Positions 8,299 to 62,866 of a stretch of 64,000 nt of DNA are shown piece by piece. The stretch is from Ophelia neglecta (lineage: Eukaryota): NCBI GenBank assembly GCA_965285935.1, contig OZ260661.1:24366001-24430000 (forward strand), in the 5' to 3' direction. The translations under genes were made by a program, and so were the position numbers. A model generated the notes under the pieces. That model searched no databases, was not told the origin of the DNA, and worked only from the letters and a program-made list of their open reading frames with translations. Within the stretch, counting starts at the first letter, position 1; every line of letters starts with the position of its first letter.

Positions 8299-11200
8299 CT
8301 ACTTACCTGCTACGTTTCCTTTCCAACAGACTTCATAGTATGTTTTACCTTTTTGACTTTTTATTCCTAATAGTTTATTAGGTTCATACCACTTATTCTC
8401 AGTCCTAACATTCTCAGACCCATCGGACTTATTAGTTTCGTCGACTTTTTTGTCTTTATCCGGAACAATATGGTCAGGTTTAAATCCAAATGTTCTGTCG
8501 ATTGGGTCTCTAAATATCATTAATCTATTCGCGTAAATCATGGACTTTTTTTTTATCTTATTTGATGTGCAACATCTTAGGCGATAAGTATTGTTTGGGC
8601 CAATTAGGCTTATGTAGTACGGGCCCGAGAAAACAAATGATGTTTATTTCTAAATTTTGGTAATTGAAGAATCTTAAGTTTTACCTTATCTCCTAATTGA
8701 ATTTTTCGTGGTTTGTTAAATCTTCTATCATAAAACATTTTATATTCTTTTGACTTTCTGCCACATTTTGTTCGGCTATTATACGTCCTTGTTGTATATT
8801 GTCGGTTATTTTAGTTAAATAATGTTGTATATTTGAAGGTACGTTTTCACTTTTAAACAGGGCGTTATCCAATGGTATTCTCATTTGTCGTTCGAATACC
8901 ATGAAGTATGGCGATAGGCCTGTTGATTTAGTTGCCGGAAAGTGTCTGTAATTCATTAGAATGGCTGGTAGTATGTCTACCCATCTTTTTGGATTTTCAT
9001 TGCAGAAGGCCCTAAATCCTTGAGCCATTGTAGCATTGTACCTCTCTGAGCAGGAATTAGTCTGCGGGTGGAAGGATGAGGTATAGGTTCTTTTTATGCC
9101 CATCAGTTTAGATGAATTAGCTTCTATTTTTGAAAGAAAGTTTTGTCCTCTGTCGGATACCAAAGTATTCATAGCTCCATAGCGGCATATACTTTCTCTG
9201 AATAAAATCTCAGCGATCGTTTCTGCTTTTTGATCTTTTAAAGGGAAAGCATCTGGAAAGCGGCTTAGGCTGTCTACTATTAGCAAAATATGTTTATGGC
9301 CTTTATCAGTTTCTGGAAGGTTAACGAGTATGTCGAAGTGCCATCTTGCAAATGTAGGTTCGATTTGGAGTGGTGTTAGATGACATATCGTTGGGTTTTT
9401 AGCATGTTTCACCAGTTGACATGTTTTACATTTGGTTATATAATCAAACACGTCTGTATACATTTTCTCCCAAAAATATTTTTGCTTAATTGCCGCATAA
9501 GTGTTTTCAGGGCCTACATGTCCTCCTATGGGAATGTCATGGCAGGACGTCAGGAGTTCTTGTTTAAGTTCTTTTGGTAGAACAACTTGAGTTATTATAT
9601 TGTTAAGTTTTGCCCTTTTTGTTTTCCTTGGTTCATGTAAGTGATGTAGGATATTATCTATAATACAATATCGCTCAGACTTCGCAATTATATGTTTAAT
9701 TTCTTTTTCGTCCTCTGGTTAAATTTCTTTATTCAAGCAATCGATGAACGGGATTAATTTCTCGTCTGTTCCTTTTGTTTCTTGGTAAGGTCGTCTTGAT
9801 AGGCAGTCAGCTGTCATTAAAGAACCCTTTTTGTATTTTATATCTATATCATAACTTTGCAGGAATAAGCTGTATCTTGCTAGCCTACCGAGGCAAGGTT
9901 TAAATTTGAGTTTATTCAAATATTGTAATGAGAAGTGGTCTGTGTACACTATTATTTTGTTATTGGCTATATAGGGGTGGTATTCTTTAAAGGCTTGTAT
10001 TAAACTTAGGCATTCCATTTCTGTTATGGGGTATATTTTCTCATAATATGTTAATGATCTTCCTCCATATGCAATAACATTTTCAGTTCCTTGGTCATTG
10101 ATTTGGCTTATTATATATCCTATTGATTCTCCGCTTGCGTCGCATGTAATAATGAAATTTATGTTGGTATTTGGATAGGCTAATATCGGTGGATTTATTA
10201 GGGCGTGTTTTAATATATCAAACGAATTTTGTTGTTCATCTGTCCACTCAAATGGGATATTTTTTCTCAAAAGTTTATTCAGTGGAGTAACTATGTGTGA
10301 GTAGCCTTTTATATAACGTCTTTAAAAATCGAATAACCCTAGTACAGATTTTACTTGTTTTTGATTTTTCGGAATTTGGAAATTTCTCATAGCTTCTGTT
10401 TTCTTAGGGTCGGGACGTAATCCTGTTCCAGAAAGTAAATGTCCTAGGAATTTTGTAGGCTCTGGAATACTAGATCAAGGTGTTTAATATGATTGTCAAT
10501 ATTATCAGAAAATATTAAACAATCATCTATATAATAGATTAAAAATTTGAATGAATATTTTTTCAATACTTAGTTGATTATTGATTGGAAGAAAAAAGGT
10601 GCGTCACGGACGCCAAAAGGGAGGCGGTTGAAACAGAATAAATCACCATATTGAGATGTAAAACCAGTTTTGTCTTTTGAATTTTCACGCATTTCGATTT
10701 GCCAAAAAGCGCTGTTGAGGTCAAGTAATCTGAATAGTTTAGCTTTAGAATTTGAAAGGCAGTTAATGGCGTCATCAACTATTGGCAGCAGCCACTGTAT
10801 GAATTGCGTGACCTTGTTCAGCTTTCTGTAATCGTTAGCTAAACGCATCTCGCCAGTATTCTTTTTTACCATCACGATTGGTGATTGCTAAAGTGAATCT
10901 TTTTCTACAATGATGTCATTCTCAAGCATAAGTTTGATTTGTCTATCTATTTCTTCCTGTACCTTAGGACTACATCTGTACGGGCGTGTATAGGCGGCTG
11001 GGCTGTCCCCTGTTTTAATTTCAAACTTCTGTATATTACATGATCCCAAATTATCAATAGATTTTGTAAAAATATCTGTGTTTTGACCTAAGAATACAAG
11101 TAATTTTTCTTTGTCATTTTTAGATAAATTTGAGTGGTCTATATTCATTCGCATTTCTTGTGCTTTGTTCATATAGTGGACCTTCTCCTGTTCATTGAGA

Positions 11201-31430: not shown

Positions 31431-32402
31431 ATGGAAGAACTACAGCAACAGAATATTCAGTTACAAGGAGAACTGGGCCAAGTGCGGCAGCAGCTACAGC
31501 GACTACACCAGCAGGTACAGGACAATGTCGATCCCGGGGAAGCCTTCAGAAATCACCTCCGAGAGGACAGGAGGGACAGACACGTTGAGAGGGAGGCCAA
31601 GCGGATGGAGCTATGCGACGGCGAGGATCCGGCCCAAGTCAAGCGCTATCTCAGGGAGATAGAGTTGACCCCGGAGAATGAGAAATTGGAAGTTTTCCGA
31701 CGATCCGCCAGGGGAGCCTTTAGACGTGAGTTCGAGCGTTACTTCGCCGCCCATCGACAGGCAGATTGGGGTGCCATTAAGGCCCATCTGCTAAGTAGCT
31801 TTGTCTCCGTAGACAATGCGGAAGCCCTTAAGCAGGAGCTACTTAAGATAAGACAGGAGCCCTTTGAGAGCCTGCTGTCTTATAACCGCAGATTTAGGGA
31901 GCTGGCAGCTGAAGCGTATCCCCCTCCCGCCGTTGGACAGAGAAACATAGATCAGGAACGGGCCCTGATAAAGGCCTATGGACGAGGGCTATCTCAAGAT
32001 TCGACCGCCCACAAGCTGACATCCCGTGGATGGCCGGCGAACTTAGAAGCGGCGATGGATAGGACGGCACAATTGGAGACAGCCCAAACTGTGTACGACC
32101 ATTTGGGTAGGATGACGGAGCCGATGGAGATCGGAGCTATTGTCCCTGCTCGAAAGCCGTTGTCAGCGGCACCGCCTCAACCGCCGAAGGACATCCAGCG
32201 ATTGCAGAGCCACATAGCGAAACTCGAGGCTCAGATCCAGCGCCTTCAGGAGCAGAGACGGCCTTCAACTACTTCCGGGCCGCCGGGCTTTAGGAGAGGT
32301 CCTTTAGGGTGTTTTAATTGCGGACGCGAGGGTCATTATGCTCGTGAGTGCCGGAGTCCAAGAAAAGGGATAAAAGCGACAACGACGCCTTCAAAAAACT
32401 AG
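31431..32402 (+). CDS. gag: Gag of element B, 323 aa
   Basis: N-terminal coiled coil, IRQEPFESLLSY, EPMEIG, zinc knuckle CFNCGREGHYAREC. Confidence 0.93.
   Translation: MEELQQQNIQLQGELGQVRQQLQRLHQQVQDNVDPGEAFRNHLREDRRDRHVEREAKRMELCDGEDPAQVKRYLREIELTPENEKLEVFRRSARGAFRREFERYFAAHRQADWGAIKAHLLSSFVSVDNAEALKQELLKIRQEPFESLLSYNRRFRELAAEAYPPPAVGQRNIDQERALIKAYGRGLSQDSTAHKLTSRGWPANLEAAMDRTAQLETAQTVYDHLGRMTEPMEIGAIVPARKPLSAAPPQPPKDIQRLQSHIAKLEAQIQRLQEQRRPSTTSGPPGFRRGPLGCFNCGREGHYARECRSPRKGIKATTTPSKN
32393..32399 (+). promoter_or_regulatory. -1 ribosomal frameshift slippery heptamer A_AAA_AAC
   Basis: Gag reads TCA AAA AAC TAG, the protease ORF is in the -1 frame, and GC-rich sequence able to form a stem follows. 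Confidence 0.8.
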
Positions 32403-35400
32403 CGCGTGACTGGCGCCCGCAGGTAAGCTTGAATGTTTCTGGTGTTTTGATAAGATTTTTAATTGATACAGGTGCCAGTCGTAGTTTAATTCGGTCGGAA
32501 ACGTTTTCGAAATTCAAAAATTGTAGGGCAAAATCTACTAGTGTGAGGTTAGAGACGCTTACGGGCCAAGACATTGAGACCGACGGACAAGCGACTTTGA
32601 CATTAGATAAGATAGGTAGCAATGTTTTCATCATAATTCCAACAATGGAGAATGAGGGCATCCTGGGGTCCGATTTTTTGAAAAAGTATGGTGCAAGTAT
32701 AGATTATGGCCGAGGGGTAATGGAAACTAAGAGCTTGAAAGTACCTTTCCGATCAGTGCAAGCAGGTTATGCGCCAAAGACAGCAAAAGCGACTGAAATC
32801 TTAGATAGGCCTGACTGGCTTTCTGATATAGACGGGCATACTGTCTTTGGGCCGGGAATCGGGCATTGTACGAAAGTTAGCCCTTGCAGGATAGAGACGG
32901 AGGGGCCACCAATCAGACAAAAACCCTACAGGCAGGCCCTAACAAAAAGGCATATTGTAGAACAGGACATCGAGAAAATTTTATATAAGACCGTCTGAGT
33001 CCCCTTGGGCCTCGCCCATCACACTGGTGCCTAAAAAGGACGGCTCCACTCGATTTTGCATAGATTATAGAAGAGTAAATAGTGTCACCCGCAAAGATGC
33101 CTATCCATTACCCAATATTCAGGACATATTTGACACCTTAGGAGGCAGCCGCTTACATACCACGGTTGACCTTCGTCAGGGGTACCATCAACTTGATTTA
33201 AGTGAAGAATCAATCGCCAAAAGTGCTTTTCTTTGTCACAAGGGCTTATACGAGTTTCTACGTCTCCCCATGGGCCTTGCGAATGCAGGCTCGCAATTTC
33301 AGAGGGCCATGAACTCCATATTGCACGAATACATAGGGAAAATCTGTCTGGTGTACCTAGACGATATTGTTATCTTTTCAAAATCAATAGAAGAGCACCA
33401 AAGGCATGTACGATTGGTGTTGGACACTATCGCTGAAGCGGGCCTGACCCTGAAAGCTTCTAAGTGTCATTTTGGCAAAGAAGTAGTGGAATTATTGGGA
33501 TATACAATATCTAGGGACGGCATCGCCCCTCAGGAAGCGAAAACAGAAGCTATAAAAAATATGCCACCCCCGAGAGACGTGAAGGGAGTGAGATCTTTTC
33601 TTGGAATGGCAGGTTATTACCGCCAGTGTATCCCCGACTTTGCAAAAATTGCCGAGCCATTGGTGAGACTAACTAAGAAAGATGAATTGTTTAGGTTTGG
33701 GCCTGAGGAAGGCGAGGCTTTTGACAAATTAAGGGCGGCACTATGCTCGAAGAATGTAATGTCTTACCAAGATCCGCTAAAGCCCTATAAGCTATACACT
33801 GACGCATCAAATTACGCAATCGGCACACAATCGGCGGGATATTAGTGCAGGAAAGGGGAGGTATTGAGAGACCGATACAGTACATTTCTAAACAATTATC
33901 TGAGGGACAAAAGAAATGGTCCGCAATTGAAAGGGAGGCCTATGCAGTGATCTACGCTATTCAAAAGCTAAGGCCCTACCTCTGGGGAGCGGAGTTCACC
34001 GTTTTTACTGATCACAAGCCGCTCTTATCTCTTTTTAGAGCTGAGGTGAAAAATACTCGTGTGCAAAGGTGGGCTATGTTAATTTCGGAATTTGGGTGCT
34101 CAATAGAATATAGAAAAGAAAAAAACAACATTAGAGCTGATATGCTATCCCGTGTCAAAATTGAGACAGTTTCGAGCGTGTGTGAAAGGTCAGGCCCTGA
34201 AGTAGAATTTGCAAGCGAATGGGAAATAGCCCAAGAGGAAGTCGAAGGTAGTGACTATGGGATCATAGAGGGAAAATTGTATTCGTTGATCCCTCCGTAC
34301 GTGGGGGCACATCCGCTCCCGAGACTCATGCCACCAAGGGAGGACAGGCTGGGGATTATACTAGAAGCGCATGAAGCAGTGGGACATCGTTCGTGGCACG
34401 CCACGCTCCGATACGCACAGGGCTCATGTGTATGGCCGGGCATGACCCGTGACGTCAAGCAAGTTTGCCAACAGTGTGTGCATTGTCAGGGGAACAAGCG
34501 CAATGGTCCCCGACAAAGATATGAAATTACAGACACCCCCTGTACCCCATTTGAAAAGGTAGGGCTGGATCTAATAGGTCCATTTCATCCAAGCCCAGAG
34601 GGTAACAAATACGTGCTTACTTGGATCGACCATCTCACAGGATGGGGGGAGGGATACCCGATCCCAGACAAGACAACGGAATCAGTATTTAAGAAGTTCT
34701 ATAGAGAATTTATTTCCCGCTTCCGTACCCCCAAGGTAATTGTCACTGACCAAGGCAAAGAGTTCATGAGTCGTGCGTTTCGTGCGTTAATGCTCAACTT
34801 GCAAATCCTGCATAAGCGAAACACCCCAGGGCATCCCCAGACAAATGGTACTGTAGAACGGTTCAACAAGACTTTGAAAGGCACGTTGAGAAAGATGGTG
34901 AATAATGACGCAAGTACATGGGAAGAACAATTGGGGCCTGCTCTGTTAGCTTATAGGATCTCTGATAATCGTACCCGCAGTTCAAATCCCTATAACTTGC
35001 TATTTGGCGTTGAGCCTAATGTAGACTCTTCCTATCAGACAGAACTGACACGATTAGAACGTATGCAGGCGGCCCGTAGGGAGAGTAGGGAAAGTCAGGT
35101 CCAGGCAAAGTATTACCGACAAGAACAGGGGCCCCGTGGGGATAAGCAGATAGCAGTAGGCGACTATGTGACTTTAGACACTAACTCACCTTAGAGATGG
35201 TGCACTAAAGGTCATCTCGGTTCGTGGCAACGTCGTTGCTGTGATCCCATTGGACCGGCCTCTGAGCGAGCCGAAGCGTTACCACGCTAATCGCCTGCGT
35301 GTGGTACCGCCCACATTGACCTGGGAGGACATAAATCCCAGAGTGCGCAGGTACGCGGGACCAAGCGACGCTCGAACACTCCAGGCAGCGGACCTAGACG

Positions 35401-35573
35401 GAGAATACGAGACATTGCCAGCAGCCAATCCGACATCTGTGAGACTAAGGCGGAAAAGACCCACTTCGCAACTCGCGCCACACTGGAGAAAACAGGCAAA
35501 GAAAGCACGAATAGAAGTACTACGAGAGGTAGGACGATGGTTTCAGCGCCAGGACTTGGTGTGTTGTTCATAG
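32393..35573 (+). pseudogene. pol: Pol of element B with three frame disruptions
   Basis: LIDTGAS, YLDD, YTDAS, HHCC and DDE motifs (GLDL, TDQG, VERFN). Lesions: deletion near 32985, small duplication near 33818-33836, deletion near 35190. Confidence 0.93.
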
Positions 35574-37287
35574 TGTTGATCTCGGCGGTAATTGCCGGGG
35601 CTCTGCAGACAGATCCCGCGCCCTACGGTGTTGTGACACTTCGTGAAGGAATAGGCAGAACTCAGACAGGAACATACGAGTTGGTACTCATAATACATAT
35701 AAGGAAGCGACCGGCTTCTTTACTACAAGGGTACCTTGACCCTCTTCTACGCCAAGCCCAGGAACTTTTAACAACTGCCAATTACACGAGGCAGGTCGTT
35801 AATTTAAATGCTTACGTGACCCGATTTCTACGACTTAGAGGCGCTACTAGAAGCAGACGAGGGCTATTTAACGCGATAGGAGAGTTGTCCAAGACTTTGT
35901 TCGGTGTCGCCACGGAAAAGGATGTTCGAAGGATAAGAGAGACAGTTAATGAACTAGTAGCTGAAGGTAACTCACTCCAAGTAGCAGTAAAAAAGCTTAT
36001 AATCTGTGTCAATCAAACCATTACACAACAGCAGGATATTTCAAAAAAGGTAGGCATATTAGCCACCCATGTAAATCAACTACAGAGAGATGTAAAACGT
36101 TATCTATATTTCTAGATAAAACTGGTATTCGTTTGTTTAATGCTGAGATGTTAATAGTGATTGAAAATGTACTATCGTTGGCAGAAGAAGTGTATAATAT
36201 GGAAAGAGATGCTGTCAGCCATTTCAAGTACAGTAGAGATCTAGCGGTGATTGGGCATGTCACTGAGACCTTATTACCTAGGTCTGTCTTAAAAGAAGTT
36301 AGAAAGCAGGTCAAGCTAGAGGTTTCAGACGAGTTTTTGTATTCTAGTTTAGAAGTCAAGATCATGAAACTGGGAGATGGTCTGGGTTATTGGGTCTCGT
36401 TACCAGTTCTGGGTGGAGAACCCTATACCTTATGGCGAATTCTGACGGTACCTTTCCCTGTTGGGAGTCGACACCGACGGGTGGTGCCTGAAGTCATGTC
36501 GGTAGGTCATGGGTTGGAATCCGGCAACTATATAGAGGCGGACCTGTGCCGTTACAGTAACCCCAGACTTTGCCCCTCCCCCGTAGAGTATGATGTACTA
36601 ACTTGTGTGAATAGCATTATAAGTCAAGACACAAATTTGTTAAAATATTGTAAGTCTGTCGAAATAGATAATCACTTTGTCAGTGCCAGGCGAGTTTCCA
36701 CCACCTCTGTAATAGTTGCCACTGACGGAGAAAAGGTAGAAGAGCGCTGCTACCTGCAAGCCCCGCAGTTTTACGAACTTAAAGCTAATACTTACCTTTT
36801 ATCCTTAAACGCTGGATGTGTGTTGGAAGGAAAAGGTTGGAAGTTTCAGGCGACACGGGTAGCTAAGCGTGAAATTGAATTAAGGGATCCGGTAGTTTTA
36901 CTACCGAGGGGGATAAATGTGACGAGTTACTTTCTAGAAGAAATGCCGAGAGTGCAGGTAGGGTTAAATTATACAGAAATTTCCGCCAGACTAGCTAGAG
37001 ATTATCTGGAGTTACCCTACCTAGATGGGATGAAGAAGGTTAAGCCTGTTTTGGTGTCTGGTGGTGCCATGGCGTACCTGGCCATGGCAGGTATAATTTT
37101 TATAGTAGCTGGAATTTTTGTATATCGTTGTGTTAAGCGAAGGTCATTGCAGAAGCGATGGTTGACCATTGAACCCACGCTCGTGCCCTCGAGTGATGGA
37201 GCCGAGGTTCGACCGACGGGGGTCAGCGCATCGCCCATATTCAGGCAGTTCTGCGGGCGGGAATCCAACGAGATTTTAAGTCCTTAA
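35537..37287 (+). pseudogene. env: F-type envelope glycoprotein of element B, one frameshift near 36110
   Basis: Signal peptide, furin site RSRR followed by GLFNAIGELSKTLFGVAT, heptad region, Cys-rich domain, TM AMAYLAMAGIIFIVAGIFVY, cytoplasmic tail. Confidence 0.9.
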
Positions 37288-56937: not shown

Positions 56938-59900
56938 ATGAAGAGTTCAGTGTGTTTGGTCATTCTCCTGGTCGGCCTCATTCCGGTAAGAACCCACTCT
57001 TTATTTCCTAGCTATGCTTGTATCTCTGTAGTTTGGAACTAAGATGTAAATTTTCCAATACCTGTGTGGAAATCCGAGGGTAGCAGAAAATAAACCCTCA
57101 ACCCCATCCCATCTTCCGCCAACCCCATCCATCCAGTGCGACTTATGGATTGCAGTAAGTTCATCAGATACTTTTTAAAATTACCTTAATAATCAAGCCT
57201 GCCTCTTGTTTGTTATCTTTTTTTCGTATAATATATTACCGGCTCTGGTAGTATTGATATCTGTCACAGGGCTGGTGTGATATATTAAATATAGTTCAAC
57301 GTACTGTTCAAAAAACATTTCATAAAAATGTATGTACCAGGAGGATCAAACTATTTCCATAGCATGTGTCATGAAGCTTGATAAGAATTTCAACTATAAT
57401 CAAAAGGTATGAGGTTGCATGATCCTATAAACTCCATGGGGTTATTACAGAAAGAAGGGATAACTTTACTTTTCCTTTTCCTTACACAGAGAAATGCTGT
57501 GGGAAAGAGAAAACCGTCTTCCATCCAGAGTCTAGAAGTGTCTGACAGTCATAAACTGATGACTTATTTGATGGAGAGGATCGCTCTTGTCAACCCCACC
57601 GGCTTGGTGAGACCAGTGCTCAATTCCAGTGAGACACTCCATGTTTCCTTCGGTTTGGCCCTGCTAGGCATAAATAACATAGACCGCGTGTCAGGGATGG
57701 CGGAGTTCCAAGTCTGGGAAAGATTTGTAAGTTTAAGCACTCAATGATTGTAAATAAGTCCTATCTGACCGAGTCCTGAGTAAAACCTATAATGGAGATG
57801 GTCATATAGAAAATATATACTGTTAGGGTTATGGTGAAGAAATATATATGTATATATTGTATGGTTGCTTTTAAGGCATGGAGAGATAGTTTCATGGGCT
57901 GGAATCCAGAGGATTTCGGTGGAATAAGTAATACCCGCGCACAGATGGGAAGGCCTATCTGGACACCCAATTTGATATTGTATAACAGGTAAAACTGGTT
58001 GACTTTAAGCCTCCCTACCAATAGGGCCAGTCGGATATGTTTCATACTGCTGACCAACAACCACTCTTCTTACCTCCAAAGCTGATTGCAATTAAAAGGC
58101 AGTGGTAAGGCTGAGATAAGTGGGGCTACTTTCAGCTGTTCATATGGGAATTTAACATGGTAATGATATTTAAAAGCCCTTACTTAGTGCTTGTTGAAGT
58201 AATCAAAACAAAACTTTCAGGGATGATTAACATTTTAGAGGGCTTTCCATTCAGGTAAATTTCACATTTGTGTGATAGCTACAGGTTTCGCAATGAACAT
58301 GGAACCGCTGCTAATCTGTAGTCTAGCCCCACATTCAAGTGCAGACTATTGGTATGCAGTGCTGTCACCTCCTTGCTAGCAGGCTGAACTAGAATTATTA
58401 CATCATCCCCGACTGACCCTATTGTTTTTAATGTTTGAATTTTTTGTGCTTTGCCAGAAAACATTTTCTGGGTTTACTTAGCTTTTCCAAAGGGGATCAC
58501 CCATCTCGTGTTTCATCACAAATTAAACGTTAATGACTCATCGAATTTCAGCCTTCGGCCATTAAAAAAAGCTGACATATTGTTCGATTCTTACATTGCC
58601 CAAGACTAAAATGATAAGAGAAAATAATGGAAGATTAATTATATTTTATGGTTACTACATTCAGATGTTTCCTCAACAAGAACTTGAACAAATCCTAATA
58701 TTACTAAGTTTACATTTGGAAAATAAACCCTTTATATACATAACTTTACAGTTACTACAATGATCTTTTAACCAATATGATGCCCAACTCGAGTATAAGT
58801 ATACATAACCATCAAGCATTTACAGTAATTCATTTGAAAGCTTTATTTAAAACAATGCTATAAGTATAGTGAAACATGCCTTGAAGACTACCTCTATATT
58901 CACACAACCGGTCAATTCAGACCTCGAATATGAAGATCATACTCCATATTAAATATAGTAAATATTAATTGTAAACTAACTGTCTTAACAGAACACCCCC
59001 ATATTCAGACCGGTATGTTGCAGTCCCTTTGGTGATGTTAATTTACGGGTTTCACTGTATTTTCCTTTGCTTGAATGAGTTTGCTAGTTTAACTCATATT
59101 AATCAAATTTCATTCGCCTTGTTCAATTGCATGCCATAGGGCGTGGACACGTTTATGGTGCTCGTGTGTGGATTTAAAAAGCCGCCTTTTGTGGCTATTT
59201 GTCCTGTTTACTTTGGCGTTTTGTATGTTTTTATTTAGCTGTCTTTATCCTGATAACAAACGTTCTTGAAAACTACCATTTGAATAGTATCATCATTATT
59301 ATAATTAGATGAATTTGCGTCATAATATTTTTTTTTTGGCTTTTTTTGTCACTTAGGCAGGCTCCATAGCCTTAGCAATCATTAAGGATGGTTTTCTCAG
59401 TTGGATTTCACATATTCCATACTCTCATATCGAGTCACTCGGGTATTGCAGCTATTTTGGAATAACTTTTGAATAGCATGAAGTATTATATTTGGTGGCA
59501 AATCTAGGTCAAATTTGGCTGGCTAGTTGTATAAAAAGGTATATCGAACTTCTAAATTATACTTGGTAGATAAACTAAACCAATAACTCACCTACAAAAA
59601 AGAGGGGTTTTCCGTGCTACTTTAATTAGATTCACAGATGTTTTTATGTTAATAGGGTAAATTTGGTAATTTTTGCTCTAAATATGTCATTTAAAGGCAA
59701 ATTGCACTCAAACTGTTAGATGTATTTAAAAAAAGTAGCTTGGGGACCTGCTTCTTTTTTCTTAGTTATGTGTTCAGTATACATTGAAACCTGTGAATAA
59801 AGACCACCAAAATGACGGGATGATACCGGTCTGATTTCGGAGGAGGTCTGTTTAAAAGCATACAGCATGGTTCTCATATTAGTGGTCTGAATTGGCAGGT

Positions 59901-62515
59901 GGTCAGACTATAGAGGTGGACTTTAAGGCAGGTTTCACTGTACATGTATTTTCTAGCAGTGGAAAATAAACCAAATTGGCTGGGTGCATTGTAACTTTTA
60001 AATTCTGACTTGAGTACTGTACCTGCCACTGAAACATATACCATATATATATTGACCATCAGGTATTTTTTAACTTCAATGTGAATAGCTAATAAATGCA
60101 ATAGATTAGGTACTATCGTTTAGTCCAACGCTGTTGATACGTTTAGAATGATTGGCTGTTATAATTTAAGGTTGTGAAACCTGTCTCTAATCACGTTAAC
60201 ATGCCTTATGAAAAACACTATGTTTCTGTTGTTTTCAGTGCTGAAAGTCCAGAGGCGTGCAGCGAGGACATGGTGGGGGTGCTGTACTCTGATGGCAGTA
60301 TATTTTATATGCATCCTACTGTGCGAAAGGTAAACCTACTAATCATAATTTCTATTATTCAATGATAGTTACATCTCAACAATGCAATATATTTTCTGGC
60401 TACTTTTTACTATCCTCTTCGAGATGAAAAATACATGAAAAGGTGTTGGTTTCTCCTACACCGTTCCCTTGAAAAGCGACCCTCTCGCCATCTTGTCTAT
60501 CATAGCCAGGTGAATATTGCTACTTTCGACATGGGGTGAATGAGCTTTGATTTGTTGAAAAAAAAACAGTTAACATCGATAATTCAAGTATGTAATGTTC
60601 TCCATTTTGAAAACAATTTTTGCACGCCGAATCAAAAATTATTAAGATGGCAATACAAGGGACAATATGGTTGGTACAGAATTAAAGAGTGGGTTGTCGA
60701 TTTAACGTTTCAATGGATCTAAAATACCTATAGGAATAATGTGTCATATGAGCAATATTATTAAAAAATATTTAGTGTATATCAATTCAATATTTTATTG
60801 TGCATTAACCTCACATATTAAGATATACTGTTTTCGAGTTCATGATAGGTTAGTGCACTATGCCTTACTGCACTCTCTTTGAGGCTCTGCACTCTATTTG
60901 AGTAAATAACTGTACGGAAGGTTTAGTAGGTCTGACAGTGTACATGTACACAGGATTACACATATGAATATTTATATAAAGTATCGTTTCGATTCGGTAC
61001 TACTACTTCTGCATCATTTTACCGAGCACTACACTTTCGGCAAATTATGTTCACTACACACTGAGGACACCCCTTGTACCGAGAACCCTATATCCCGACT
61101 CAAATGAACTATTTAAAACTGATGTTGAAATAGATTTGATCGATCCACCACGGCTGCTATTCCGTCTTTGTTATCGCCCACAGGCGGCAGCAGGGGGAAC
61201 AGTGCGAAAAGGTGTAGGATATAATATATCAATTTACGTAGGCAGAAAATCATGGTCCTTATGGATCAAAAGTGTCACGTGCGCGAAAAATATATGACAG
61301 TGTCGCGTGACAGGAAAAGGTGGGAATTCTACCTCAAAACAGGCAATTCAGTTAATTCGGTAACGTGGGCGATATTAAAGAATGCATGACGCAAACACCA
61401 AGGCATATGGCAATGAAAGCCGCCAGATCGAATCCAGACGGGTGTTGAAGGAGTCCCGCAGACAGACATTGACAGACGTCAACTCGATCTCATCTATTTG
61501 CCACAATCCAGGAGGTACAGCCAATTATACAAGCCACATTAATTCTGGAGACTTTCAGAAAAAAAAGTTTAAAATCATACGATGCTAGAAAACAGTGTGC
61601 ACAAGCTACTGCTGACGCAGATATTGTCTATGTGTAATTGGTGTGTTTAAAAAAAGGGTGCCTCTAATTGGTTTGTTATGTATGACGTTTGACCTATTTA
61701 AACCCGAAGGCAAGTGACGCTTTTTGCCAGAGCAATTTGTCCCTGGGTGCCGCTGACTTCTGGTGGTGACGTCAATATCGAACGCAGGCCAAGCGTCATT
61801 CGCTTTCTGGGCCAATCAGCGTTCACCATTTGAGCGCGTCACACATGCATAGATTACATATTTGATGCTTCGAGTAGTTTTTTTTTTCGCACAACTAGTC
61901 TCCAGACTTTATGCCACTGGTATAACTAGGCTGAAGTGGAAGCGGACACTCTTGACTAAACAAAGCATTTATTGTTAATACACTGTATATAGGTAAAATT
62001 AAAACATATACTGTTCTCATTGCATTAATTCAAATACATGTAGCTTATATTTGAAGAAAAAAAATTAGGAAAAGAGCCCTTTATATACTAGAAATATGTA
62101 GTGGAATCCAAAACAGTTAGTGTTTATTTTTCAGGTGAGATGTCGAATTGAGGAAGGAGGTATTTTCGACAAGGATGTCGCTCATTGCTCCTTCAAGTAA
62201 GACATTCTGCTCGTATATCTGTCATACAAGATTCCGTATCGTTTTATAGATTAGATCGACTGTGATAACACACATGACATCATACAAAATGTGCCTTTTA
62301 TTCTCTGATTCAGATATGGCACCCGGGTATGGGACGGGTTTAATGTGGACATTGATTTTTATGATGGTTTGGAATCTACTGATCTCAGTGATTTCCCCTC
62401 CGACAACCGATATGGGATTCTGAACAGTAAAGCCAAAAAGAATGTAAAATTCTATCCTTGTTGCCAGGAGCCATATCCTGATCTTACCTTCAGACTAGAG
62501 ATAAATTTGCATTAA
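56938..62515 (+). CDS. Secreted acetylcholine-binding-protein-like protein (nAChR ligand-binding domain only), 250 aa
   Basis: Exons 56938-56985, 57490-57726, 57876-57988, 60239-60329, 62135-62196, 62314-62515; phases compatible, 753 nt. Signal peptide MKSSVCLVILLVGLIP; motifs VRPV, WRD..WNPEDFGGI, IWTPNLILYNS, Cys-loop, FYPCCQEPYPDL; TAA where TM1 would begin. Confidence 0.9.
58867..59057. mobile_element. Tc1/mariner-type MITE
   Basis: TA|TAGTGAAAC...GTTTCACTG|TA; same terminus family as 172-338. Confidence 0.65.
59782..59940. mobile_element. Tc1/mariner-type MITE
   Basis: TA|CATTGAAACCTG...CAGGTTTCACTG|TA. Confidence 0.7.
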
Positions 62516-62609
62516 GAACAATCTGGCCCAACCAAACCCATGTTTAGTGGTTCAAGGTACAATGTAAGAAAAGCTCAAATGATGATTTGATTCGAAATAC
62601 GGCTGTCAA

Positions 62610-62798: not shown

Positions 62799-62866
62799 CA
62801 TAAATAAATATTAGTATCAGTTTATTTAATATATGCTAAAACTATGCACTGTAACTTTTTTGTTTA

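What the first reader, a model, noticed from the sequence alone, without database searches (positions are those of the whole stretch)
56938..62515. Hidden secreted AChBP-like gene with a charge-reversed pocket (loop B Trp to Arg)
Seen: the spliced product has a signal peptide, a full nAChR extracellular domain and a stop before TM1. Loop A Tyr (LYNS), loop D Trp (QVWER) and loop C (YPCCQEPY) are kept. Loop B reads KYGTRVWDG instead of KFGSW(T/V)YDG, with codon CGG one base from TGG. Established: this Trp makes the key cation-pi contact with acetylcholine and nicotine. Inference: the protein binds something else (an anionic or zwitterionic ligand, toxin, pigment or mineral, as in molluscan ACCBP), or the Trp two residues later compensates.
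Basis: partly seen in the sequence, partly recalled or inferred. Interest (0 to 1): 0.8.

Follow-up and report, generated by a model that had tools for sequence, protein, structure and literature searches.

The report
Soluble nicotinic-type domain, Trp-to-Arg pocket
An intact six-exon gene in a probable annelid worm encodes a secreted copy of the nicotinic-receptor ligand-binding domain whose central acetylcholine-contacting tryptophan is an arginine, so it probably no longer binds acetylcholine in the classical way; there is no expression or binding data yet.

Summary
Window 56938-62515 (+) carries a six-exon, all GT-AG, 250-codon gene. It encodes a signal peptide and a complete Cys-loop ligand-binding domain, with a stop exactly where TM1 would begin. 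No TM-coding DNA lies in the window or in the next 20 kb.

It is one of five same-structure soluble paralogues on this chromosome, at 56-87% amino-acid identity. All four others read FGSW(T/S)(Y/F/H)DGF in loop B; this one reads YGTRVWDGF, with CGG at 62324-62326.

- Trp at this position occurs in 187/187 database relatives.
- It also occurs in about 93% of 39 further domains of this genome. None of those has a charged residue there.
- Branch dN/dS is about 0.3, the same as the sister lineage, with no stops or frameshifts. The gene has been under constraint.

Most likely it is a real, rebuilt, non-cholinergic pocket. The ligand, or a self-occupied site, is inferred only.

It does hold notes on orphan nAChR-like channels elsewhere in this genome.

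The parts
56938..56985 (+). Exon 1: start codon and signal-peptide core (16 codons, phase 0 donor)
   Evidence: Homologous exon 1, 69% identical, in paralogues L044 and L007.
57490..57726 (+). Exon 2: end of leader, GKRK, N-terminal helix, conserved N-x-S sequon, beta1-beta2. Loop D Trp at 57715-57717; Arg two residues later at 57721-57723.
   Evidence: PF02931 profile 15-52. 76-81% identical to the closest paralogues.
57876..57988 (+). Exon 3: loop A. W-T-P-N, with Asn (57969-57971) in place of the conserved Asp; Tyr A at 57981-57983.
   Evidence: PF02931 31.1 bits, above the cut-off. Alignment to Torpedo alpha 60-94 puts Asn at D89 and Tyr at Y93.
60239..60329 (+). Exon 4: beta5-beta6 and loop E. 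Extra Cys at 60258-60260; gene-specific Phe at 60303-60305 and His at 60312-60314.
   Evidence: Homologues align here. No PDB hit for this exon alone.
62135..62196 (+). Exon 5: Cys-loop (Cys 62141-62143 and 62186-62188, 14 residues between). It is hydrophilic and lacks the FPFD motif of channel subunits.
   Evidence: Channel paralogues keep FPFD before loop B.
62314..62515 (+). Exon 6: loop B with Arg (CGG 62324-62326) and Trp two residues later, loop F, loop C (Tyr 62453-62455, Cys-Cys 62459-62464, Tyr 62474-62476), beta10, TAA stop.
62803..62808 (+). First AATAAA after the stop: possible polyadenylation signal, giving a 3' UTR of roughly 300 nt
   Evidence: Read directly from the sequence. 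Not tested.

Best explanation
This is a real, selectively maintained gene for a secreted, TM-less Cys-loop ligand-binding domain with AChBP-type architecture. It is one of five paralogues that arose in this, probably annelid, lineage. On its own branch the orthosteric pocket was rebuilt. The loop B Trp became Arg, and the loop A Asp that braces loop B became Asn. Loop E gained Phe and His, and the residues beside the loop B position changed too. Tyr A, Tyr C1, Tyr C2, the vicinal Cys pair and Trp D were kept.

Inferred mechanism: the tethered guanidinium lies in or at the mouth of the remaining aromatic cage. With the family's loop D Arg it makes the site electropositive, so quaternary-ammonium and protonated-amine ligands (acetylcholine, nicotine, cyclic imines) are no longer bound with classical affinity. 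The protein would then act as a non-cholinergic binding protein or as a silent, self-occupied subunit.

Shown: the gene structure, the substitutions, their rarity, and the constraint on the gene. Inferred: the position of the Arg side chain, the loss of acetylcholine binding, and any new ligand.
For: - Gene model and domain.
- No TM part.
- Five-gene family with identical intron positions and phases, and a stop at the LBD end in all.
- All four paralogues use TGG at the loop B position; this gene has CGG. Five of the first six exon 6 codons differ, needing 7 nucleotide changes, so this is not a single-base slip.
- Trp at this position in 101/101 alignable representatives and 187/187 relatives overall.
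- In 39 other alignable LBDs of this genome the position is 36 Trp, 2 Leu and 1 Tyr, with no charged residue.
- Loop A Asp>Asn against Torpedo D89. Asp is found in 128 of 133 relatives.
- 14 changes at sites invariant in the other four paralogues. Those in loop A (D>N), loop E (L>F, P>H), loop B (F>Y, S>T, W>R) and beside TyrC1 (Y>F) lie in binding loops.
- Constraint: pairwise dN/dS about 0.3. Branch estimates are 0.26-0.36 for this gene against 0.25-0.34 for its sister. No stop, frameshift or broken splice site.
- The other haplotype or individual shows one synonymous and one Leu>Val difference in exon 3.
- Literature: TrpB makes the cation-pi contact and is absolutely required in alpha7. 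The loop A Asp hydrogen-bonds to the loop B backbone. A loop D Arg is the carboxylate binder of GABA, Gly and Glu receptors (PMC4006026).
- Precedent: GLIC has Arg133 in loop B, which 'partially obstructs' the orthosteric pocket and aids carboxylate access (PMC10859675).
Against: - No RNA evidence at all; no RNA run is on record for this organism.
- No orthologue was found in another species, so conservation of the Arg over time is unknown.
- The clustering of changes in loop B is not significant by shuffling: 5 changes in 6 codons, P = 0.11.
- dN/dS averages over the whole branch and cannot exclude a recent loss of function.
- No structural model of the spliced protein was made, so where the Arg side chain lies is conjecture.
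- Cashin et al., as cited in PMC4006026, found the loop A Asp hydrogen-bond network redundant, so Asp>Asn alone may matter little.
Confidence: 0.55

Rival explanations
1. Neofunctionalised binder. The Arg in loop B together with the loop D Arg forms a site for an anionic or zwitterionic small molecule (carboxylate, sulfonate, phosphate), while the retained Tyr and Trp residues hold the rest of the ligand. This is a sharper version of the best explanation, with a specific gain of function.
For: - Two Arg residues would face the site: loop B 62324-62326, and loop D +2 at 57721-57723, the position of GluCl Arg56 and AChBP Gln55.
- The rest of the cage, the vicinal Cys pair and the gene as a whole are kept under constraint.
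- The GLIC orthosteric region, with Arg77, Arg105 and Arg133, binds carboxylates.
- The annelid orphan receptor Alpo4 binds the zwitterion CHAPS, with a salt bridge from its sulfonate to an Arg (PMC10338036).
Against: - No ligand is known and no model was made.
- The loop D Arg is shared by all five paralogues and by Trp-bearing relatives, so it is not part of a specific change here.
- Loop A lost a negative charge rather than the site gaining a designed anion cradle.
- The clustering of changes is not significant.
Confidence: 0.2
2. It still binds cholinergic ligands. The remaining aromatic residues (Tyr A, Tyr C1/C2, Trp D), perhaps helped by the new Trp two residues after the Arg, keep useful affinity for acetylcholine or nicotinic ligands.
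For: - Four of five box residues and the vicinal Cys pair are intact.
- In alpha7 the cation-pi contact with acetylcholine is made by TyrA, not TrpB (PMC4006026).
- Tyr>Trp at B+2 is a gene-specific change.
Against: - The same review reports an absolute requirement for TrpB in alpha7.
- It also states that the B+2 side chain points well away from bound ligand.
- A fixed cation in the cage should repel cationic ligands.
- Trp is invariant in 187/187 relatives, which argues that it cannot easily be spared.
Confidence: 0.1
3. The gene is silent or recently inactivated, or is a subunit with no function of its own. The pocket changes would be drift after duplication in a redundant five-gene family.
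For: - No expression data.
- The family is redundant, with five copies.
- Other copies also carry pocket changes: loop D Trp>Phe in the 26.32 Mb copy and loop C Pro>His in the 26.20 Mb copy.
- Pocket degeneration is common in lophotrochozoan nAChR expansions; only 13 of 33 oyster alpha subunits keep all principal-site residues (PMC6896357).
Against: - The reading frame, six exons and ten splice sites are intact.
- Branch dN/dS of 0.26-0.36 equals that of the sister lineage over dS of about 0.35-0.5.
- The signal peptide, glycosylation sequon, Cys-loop and vicinal Cys pair are all retained.
- Exon differences in the second DNA sample are synonymous or conservative.
Confidence: 0.12
4. The CGG is an assembly or sequencing error, or a rare allele of an otherwise ordinary Trp-bearing gene.
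For: - TGG and CGG differ by one base.
- The reads table did not print every minor difference.
- All DNA runs come from one sample.
Against: - The neighbouring codons are also changed, 7 nucleotide differences across 5 of 6 codons, and loops A and E changed as well.
- Contigs of three runs cover 62250-62449 at depth 12-31, with no well-supported difference listed in exon 6.
- CGG lies in a CpG, where decay runs towards TGG, not from it (inference).
Confidence: 0.03

Closest known systems
Molluscan acetylcholine-binding proteins (Lymnaea, Aplysia, Bulinus, Biomphalaria AChBP)
   Same: Secreted protein of about 210-250 residues consisting of a Cys-loop LBD only. It has a hydrophilic Cys-loop of non-standard length, a vicinal Cys pair in loop C, and Tyr A, Tyr C1, Tyr C2 and the loop D aromatic residue. 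Exon 6 aligns to Aplysia AChBP at E about 1e-7 to 5e-9.
   Different: Loop B Trp (Ls W143 / Ac W147) is Arg and the loop A Asp is Asn. Orthology is not shown: exon 6 scores better against the human alpha9 LBD (1e-11) than against any AChBP. A true nAChR of this genome is as close in exon 6 (56%) as the soluble paralogues, so the soluble family may have arisen independently.
Capitella teleta AChBP (PDB 4AFG/4AFH/4B5D), the one characterised annelid AChBP
   Same: Annelid, soluble LBD.
   Different: Only a weak match to exon 6 (E = 0.0025). The closest named Capitella protein (P0157, LBD only) is not the crystallised protein. The original paper was not held, so its pocket could not be compared in detail.
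ACCBP of Pinctada and Haliotis (amorphous calcium carbonate-binding protein)
   Same: An AChBP-family protein recruited to a non-neuronal role. It forms di-pentamers (PMC3423370). The window protein has an extra, unpaired Cys (60258-60260) that could in principle link subunits or pentamers.
   Different: The source describes CaCO3 binding as presumably achieved through a glycan-rich part and triggered by acetylcholine binding, so no rebuilt pocket is described for it. Nothing here links the window gene to mineral binding.
GLIC (Gloeobacter pLGIC) orthosteric region with loop B Arg133
   Same: An Arg in loop B that partly obstructs the orthosteric pocket. Several Arg residues around the site bind or admit carboxylates (PMC10859675).
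   Different: GLIC is a bacterial proton-gated channel with TM domain and no aromatic cage of the nAChR type. Exact positional equivalence of Arg133 and TrpB was not checked here.
Alpo4, orphan nAChR-like receptor of the annelid Alvinella pompejana
   Same: An annelid Cys-loop protein with no known ligand. Its apo pocket is 'self-liganded' through a cation-pi pair between a loop E His and loop B Trp, and a zwitterionic sulfonate is bound with an Arg salt bridge (PMC10338036). The window protein has a gene-specific loop E His.
   Different: Alpo4 keeps TrpB, lacks the vicinal Cys pair and is a full channel. Equivalence of the two His residues was not tested.
Expanded, pocket-divergent nAChR genes of lophotrochozoans
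   Same: Large lineage-specific expansions, including LBD-only forms and frequent loss of principal-site residues (PMC6896357). This genome has more than 150 LBD and TM hits.
   Different: Even here TrpB is kept in about 93% of surveyed domains, and the exceptions are Leu or Tyr, never a charged residue.

Membership tests
Cys-loop receptor ligand-binding domain (Pfam PF02931) | Match to the family profile over the whole domain | tested here: met
   Tested exon by exon. Exon 3 scores 31.1 bits (cut-off 26); exons 2 and 6 score 15.9 and 16.6 bits. The matches are colinear at profile 15-52, 57-91 and 154-212 of 216. The joined protein was not scanned.
Cys-loop receptor ligand-binding domain (Pfam PF02931) | Cys-loop disulfide pair | tested here: met
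   Two Cys in exon 5 (62141-62143, 62186-62188), 14 residues apart instead of the usual 13. Variable length is known for AChBPs (PMC4569296).
Cys-loop receptor ligand-binding domain (Pfam PF02931) | [quoted passage not shown] | tested here: met
   W-T-P in exon 3. Loop D Trp at 57715-57717.
AChBP-type soluble binding protein | N-terminal signal peptide | tested here: met
   Met-Lys-Ser-Ser followed by 12 hydrophobic residues, conserved in paralogues. Judged by inspection only; no predictor was run.
AChBP-type soluble binding protein | No TM1-TM4; stop at the end of the LBD | tested here: met
   TAA directly after beta10. The stop is at the same position in four paralogues. No TM similarity in the window or 20 kb downstream. 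No listed PF02932 hit near the locus.
AChBP-type soluble binding protein | Cys-loop without the FPFD coupling motif | tested here: met
   Exon 5 is hydrophilic and lacks FPFD, which the channel paralogues keep.
AChBP-type soluble binding protein | Complete aromatic box (Tyr A, Trp B, Tyr C1, Tyr C2, Trp/Tyr D) with vicinal Cys pair | tested here: not met
   Trp B is Arg. The other four residues and the Cys pair are present.
AChBP-type soluble binding protein | Binds acetylcholine and nicotinic ligands | not testable with these tools
   Needs recombinant protein and binding assays.
AChBP-type soluble binding protein | Homopentamer | not tested
AChBP-type soluble binding protein | Common descent with molluscan AChBPs | tested here: inconclusive
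   The best PDB match of exon 6 is the alpha9 nAChR LBD, then engineered and wild-type Aplysia AChBP; Capitella AChBP is weak. No tree was built.
ACCBP | Glycan-rich part, di-pentamer, CaCO3 binding | not testable with these tools
   Only an extra unpaired Cys (60258-60260) and one conserved N-x-S sequon were seen.
nAChR channel subunit | PF02932 transmembrane domain following the LBD | tested here: not met
   The contrast is the nAChR at C8:80.28 Mb, which continues into TM1 in the same exon.

The most novel reading that the evidence does not exclude
A eukaryotic soluble Cys-loop pentamer that has switched from cation recognition to recognition of an anionic or zwitterionic ligand. It would do this by placing an Arg at the loop B Trp position opposite the loop D Arg, inside an otherwise intact nicotinic aromatic cage. 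That would be a natural example of ligand-class switching on the principal face, made directly testable by a small soluble protein.
Probability: 0.2. Interest if true: 0.75.

Novelty: new variant of a known kind. Interest (0 to 1): 0.45.

Why it matters
AChBPs are the standard soluble surrogates for nicotinic and other Cys-loop receptor binding sites, and their loop B Trp is treated as near-invariant. This is a natural member that keeps the fold, the vicinal Cys pair and four of five cage residues, yet carries a cation at the centre of the cage.

It would be a ready-made system for asking what the Trp is needed for. It would also show how a binding site changes ligand class and what non-cholinergic ligands the expanded lophotrochozoan receptor families recognise.

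The four Trp-bearing paralogues in the same genome are natural controls. If the gene is silent or the site is simply dead, it is one more example of pocket decay in a large gene family.

Tried and rejected
- **RNA evidence.** The look-up of sequencing runs returned no RNA run, only three DNA runs from one sample. Laying them showed even depth over introns and exons, so they are DNA. They gave only weak support for the CGG base, because 160 lesser differences were not printed.
- **Orthologues.** A HMMER scan of 1.84 billion representatives with exon 6 found nothing closer than about 40-60% per exon. A profile and word search seeded with the exons by reference gave the same result. None of the hits matched any of the five family members closely. 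Conservation of the Arg across species therefore could not be tested.
- **Source organism of the closest soluble relatives.** The look-ups returned no names and no DNA.
- **Clustering of changes in loop B.** The shuffle test was not significant (P = 0.11), so I do not claim positive selection.
- **Exon 4 against the PDB.** No match, so loop E equivalences rest on the paralogue alignment and on motif position only.
- **Capitella AChBP paper.** Not held.
- **Alternative exon 6 with Trp, or a downstream TM exon.** None in the window or in 20 kb downstream.
- There was therefore no whole-protein Pfam scan, exact-sequence look-up, structure or pentamer prediction, or signal-peptide predictor. Distances and dN/dS were summed exon by exon.
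- **Rejected readings.**
  - Channel subunit with unseen TM exons.
  - Single-base error.
  - ACCBP-like mineral binder, for which there is no evidence.


Full report
**What is there.** Window 56938-62515 (+) holds six open exon segments with canonical AG/GT borders: 56938-56985, 57490-57726, 57876-57988, 60239-60329, 62135-62196 and 62314-62515. Together they give 753 nt, or 250 codons and a TAA. Scanned exon by exon, Pfam PF02931 (Neur_chan_LBD) matches exons 2, 3 and 6 in order, at profile positions 15-52, 57-91 and 154-212 of 216. Database homologues laid on the DNA by tblastn stop at the same borders. Exon 1 is a Met-Lys-Ser-Ser plus 12-hydrophobic-residue leader.

**No channel part.** The last exon ends in a stop directly after the beta10 strand.
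- A TM-domain query found nothing in the window or in the following 20 kb.
- No listed PF02932 hit of the genome lies near C1:24.4 Mb.
- A genuine nAChR gene of the same genome (C8:80.28 Mb) runs from the same loop C motif straight into TM1 in one exon.

**Rule observed.** The spliced protein was never joined or handed to a tool. Whole-protein scans, exact look-ups and structure or pentamer prediction are therefore missing from this report.

**The pocket.**
- HMMER aligns loop B, YGTRVWDGF, to FGSWVYSGF of Aplysia AChBP. This puts the Arg (CGG, 62324-62326) on the loop B Trp.
- Alignment of exon 3 to Torpedo alpha 60-94 puts Tyr on Y93. It puts an Asn (57969-57971) on the conserved D89 of the W-x-P-D motif.
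- Loop D Trp (57715-57717), Tyr C1, the vicinal Cys pair and Tyr C2 (62453-62476) are kept.
- The review PMC4006026 summarises the roles of these residues:
  - TrpB makes the cation-pi contact with acetylcholine and nicotine and is absolutely required in alpha7.
  - The loop A Asp accepts hydrogen bonds from loop B backbone amides, although that network is partly redundant.
  - The residue two positions after TrpB is 'oriented well away' from bound ligand.

**A family, and how odd this member is.** The genome is 762 Mb and the window is C1:24366001-24430000. It is probably an annelid, because the best named relatives come from Paralvinella, Capitella, Lamellibrachia, Dimorphilus and Helobdella. 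Other notes of this scan say the same.

The genome holds four more genes with the same six exons, intron phases and stop position, all on C1. They lie at 26.20 Mb (+), 26.32 Mb (-), 146.98 Mb (+) and 147.88 Mb (+). Over 212 aligned codons they are 56-63% identical to the window gene and 57-87% to each other. The window gene is sister to the 26 Mb pair.

All four have FGSW(T/S)(Y/F/H)DGF with TGG. The window gene differs in five of the first six exon 6 codons, by 7 nucleotide changes, so the Arg is not a one-base slip.

Counts for the loop B position:

| Set | Result |
|---|---|
| Closest representatives of a 1.84-billion-protein library, alignable | 101 of 101 Trp |
| Those plus relatives from the second search | 187 of 187 Trp |
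| LBD exons most similar to exon 6 in this genome | all Trp |
| 39 further alignable LBDs of this genome | 36 Trp, 2 Leu, 1 Tyr |

The loop A Asp is present in 128 of 133 relatives.

Fourteen residues are changed in the window gene at sites invariant in the other four. The binding-loop changes among them are:
- loop A: D>N;
- loop E: L>F and P>H;
- loop B: F>Y, S>T and W>R;
- beside Tyr C1: Y>F.

A Y>C change also adds an unpaired Cys. The loop D +2 position is Arg in the whole family. That is the position of GluCl Arg56 and AChBP Gln55. In the window protein two Arg residues would therefore face the site.

**Is the gene alive?**
- The frame and all ten splice sites are intact.
- Pairwise dN/dS to the closest paralogues is about 0.3 at dS of about 0.75.
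- Three-taxon branch estimates give 0.26-0.36 for the window branch and 0.25-0.34 for its sister. These are rough, because dS to the outgroups is near saturation.
- Contigs of three DNA runs (one sample, differing from the assembly at many intron sites) cover the gene. In exons they show a synonymous change (57914) and a Leu>Val change (57972). No well-supported difference is listed in exon 6, although 160 minor differences were not printed.

The gene has been under purifying selection for most of its history. Limits remain:
- No RNA run exists for this organism.
- No orthologue or near-identical protein is in the collections.
- The clustering of changes in loop B is not significant by shuffling (P = 0.11).

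**Interpretation.** The best-supported reading is a real, constrained paralogue of a lineage-specific soluble-LBD family whose orthosteric site is no longer a classical cholinergic site. How the Arg sits is inference. It may be a tethered cation inside the remaining cage, a self-occupied site. Or, with the loop D Arg, it may form an electropositive site for an anionic or zwitterionic ligand.

Precedents:
- GLIC has Arg133 in loop B, which partly obstructs its orthosteric pocket and aids carboxylate access (PMC10859675).
- The annelid orphan Alpo4 has a self-liganded apo pocket and binds a zwitterionic sulfonate through an Arg (PMC10338036).

From my own knowledge, not checked here, Arg side chains of snake alpha-neurotoxins insert into this cage in trans.

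Rivals are residual cholinergic binding through Tyr A, a silent or recently dead gene, and an error or rare allele. The ACCBP analogy has no support; per PMC3423370 ACCBP's mineral binding is presumed to go through a glycan-rich part.

**Novelty and score.** Soluble LBDs (AChBPs) are known from molluscs, one annelid and a spider (PMC4569296). Pocket-divergent nAChR-like genes are common in lophotrochozoans (PMC6896357), and this scan has already noted several in this genome. What is new is an AChBP-type protein with a charged residue at the TrpB position, beside four Trp-bearing paralogues that can serve as controls. I class it as a new variant of a known kind, with moderate interest (0.45). 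The substitution is truly rare, but function and even expression are untested.

Noticed in passing
window 31431-37287 (+): Ty3/gypsy-type LTR retroelement. Consecutive ORFs hit gag and zinc knuckle, aspartyl protease, reverse transcriptase, RNase H and integrase. A further ORF gives a weak, below-cut-off match to Baculovirus F protein (env-like). The frames are split into several ORFs. Observed only, not analysed further.
   Followed up: partly
window 8693-9463 (-): ORF with an integrase core domain (rve) exactly at the Pfam cut-off, probably another transposable-element remnant.
   Followed up: no
window 57850-58450, 59650-60050, 61450-62050 (introns 3 and 4 of the gene); weaker at 58850-59050: Summed contig depth in three DNA runs rises from about 20 to between 10,000 and 400,000 here, with many loose ends and joints. 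These are high-copy repeats inside the introns.
   Followed up: no
G000:C1:26.20 Mb (L044), 26.32 Mb (L007), 146.98 Mb (L042), 147.88 Mb (L043/L015): Four soluble-LBD paralogues with the same six-exon structure. The 26.32 Mb copy has loop D Trp>Phe. The 26.20 Mb copy has Pro>His just before the vicinal Cys pair. Pocket changes are therefore not confined to the window gene.
   Followed up: partly
G000:C1:24733053-24733119 (L011:5085-5117), about 305 kb downstream of the gene: An isolated piece 79% identical in DNA to the exon 5 region, with the second Cys-loop Cys replaced by Trp. No other exons were found in the 10 kb fetched. It is probably a decayed fragment of a further copy.
   Followed up: partly
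window 60258-60260: A Tyr>Cys change specific to this gene gives the mature protein five Cys, so one is unpaired. It could make disulfide-linked dimers of subunits or pentamers.
   Followed up: no
window about 62555-62590 versus L007 and L044 just after their stop codons: A motif of about 30 nt (GTACAATGTAAGAAAAG... CAAATGAT) follows the stop directly in the 26 Mb paralogues and lies about 40 nt after the stop in the window gene. It may be a conserved 3' UTR element or a remnant of common ancestry.
   Followed up: no
G000 whole genome: More than 150 scored hits each for the LBD and TM domains of Cys-loop channels, many in tandem clusters on C2, C5, C7, C8 and C12. In a sample of 39 LBDs, three lack the loop B Trp: L061 has Tyr, and L071 and L082 have Leu.
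   Followed up: partly
P0151 (ENA metagenome assembly, 9.2 kb contig): A 254-residue soluble-LBD relative, 56% identical in exon 6, is encoded without introns (765 nt) in an unnamed organism. It could be a retrocopy or come from a lineage with intron loss.
   Followed up: no
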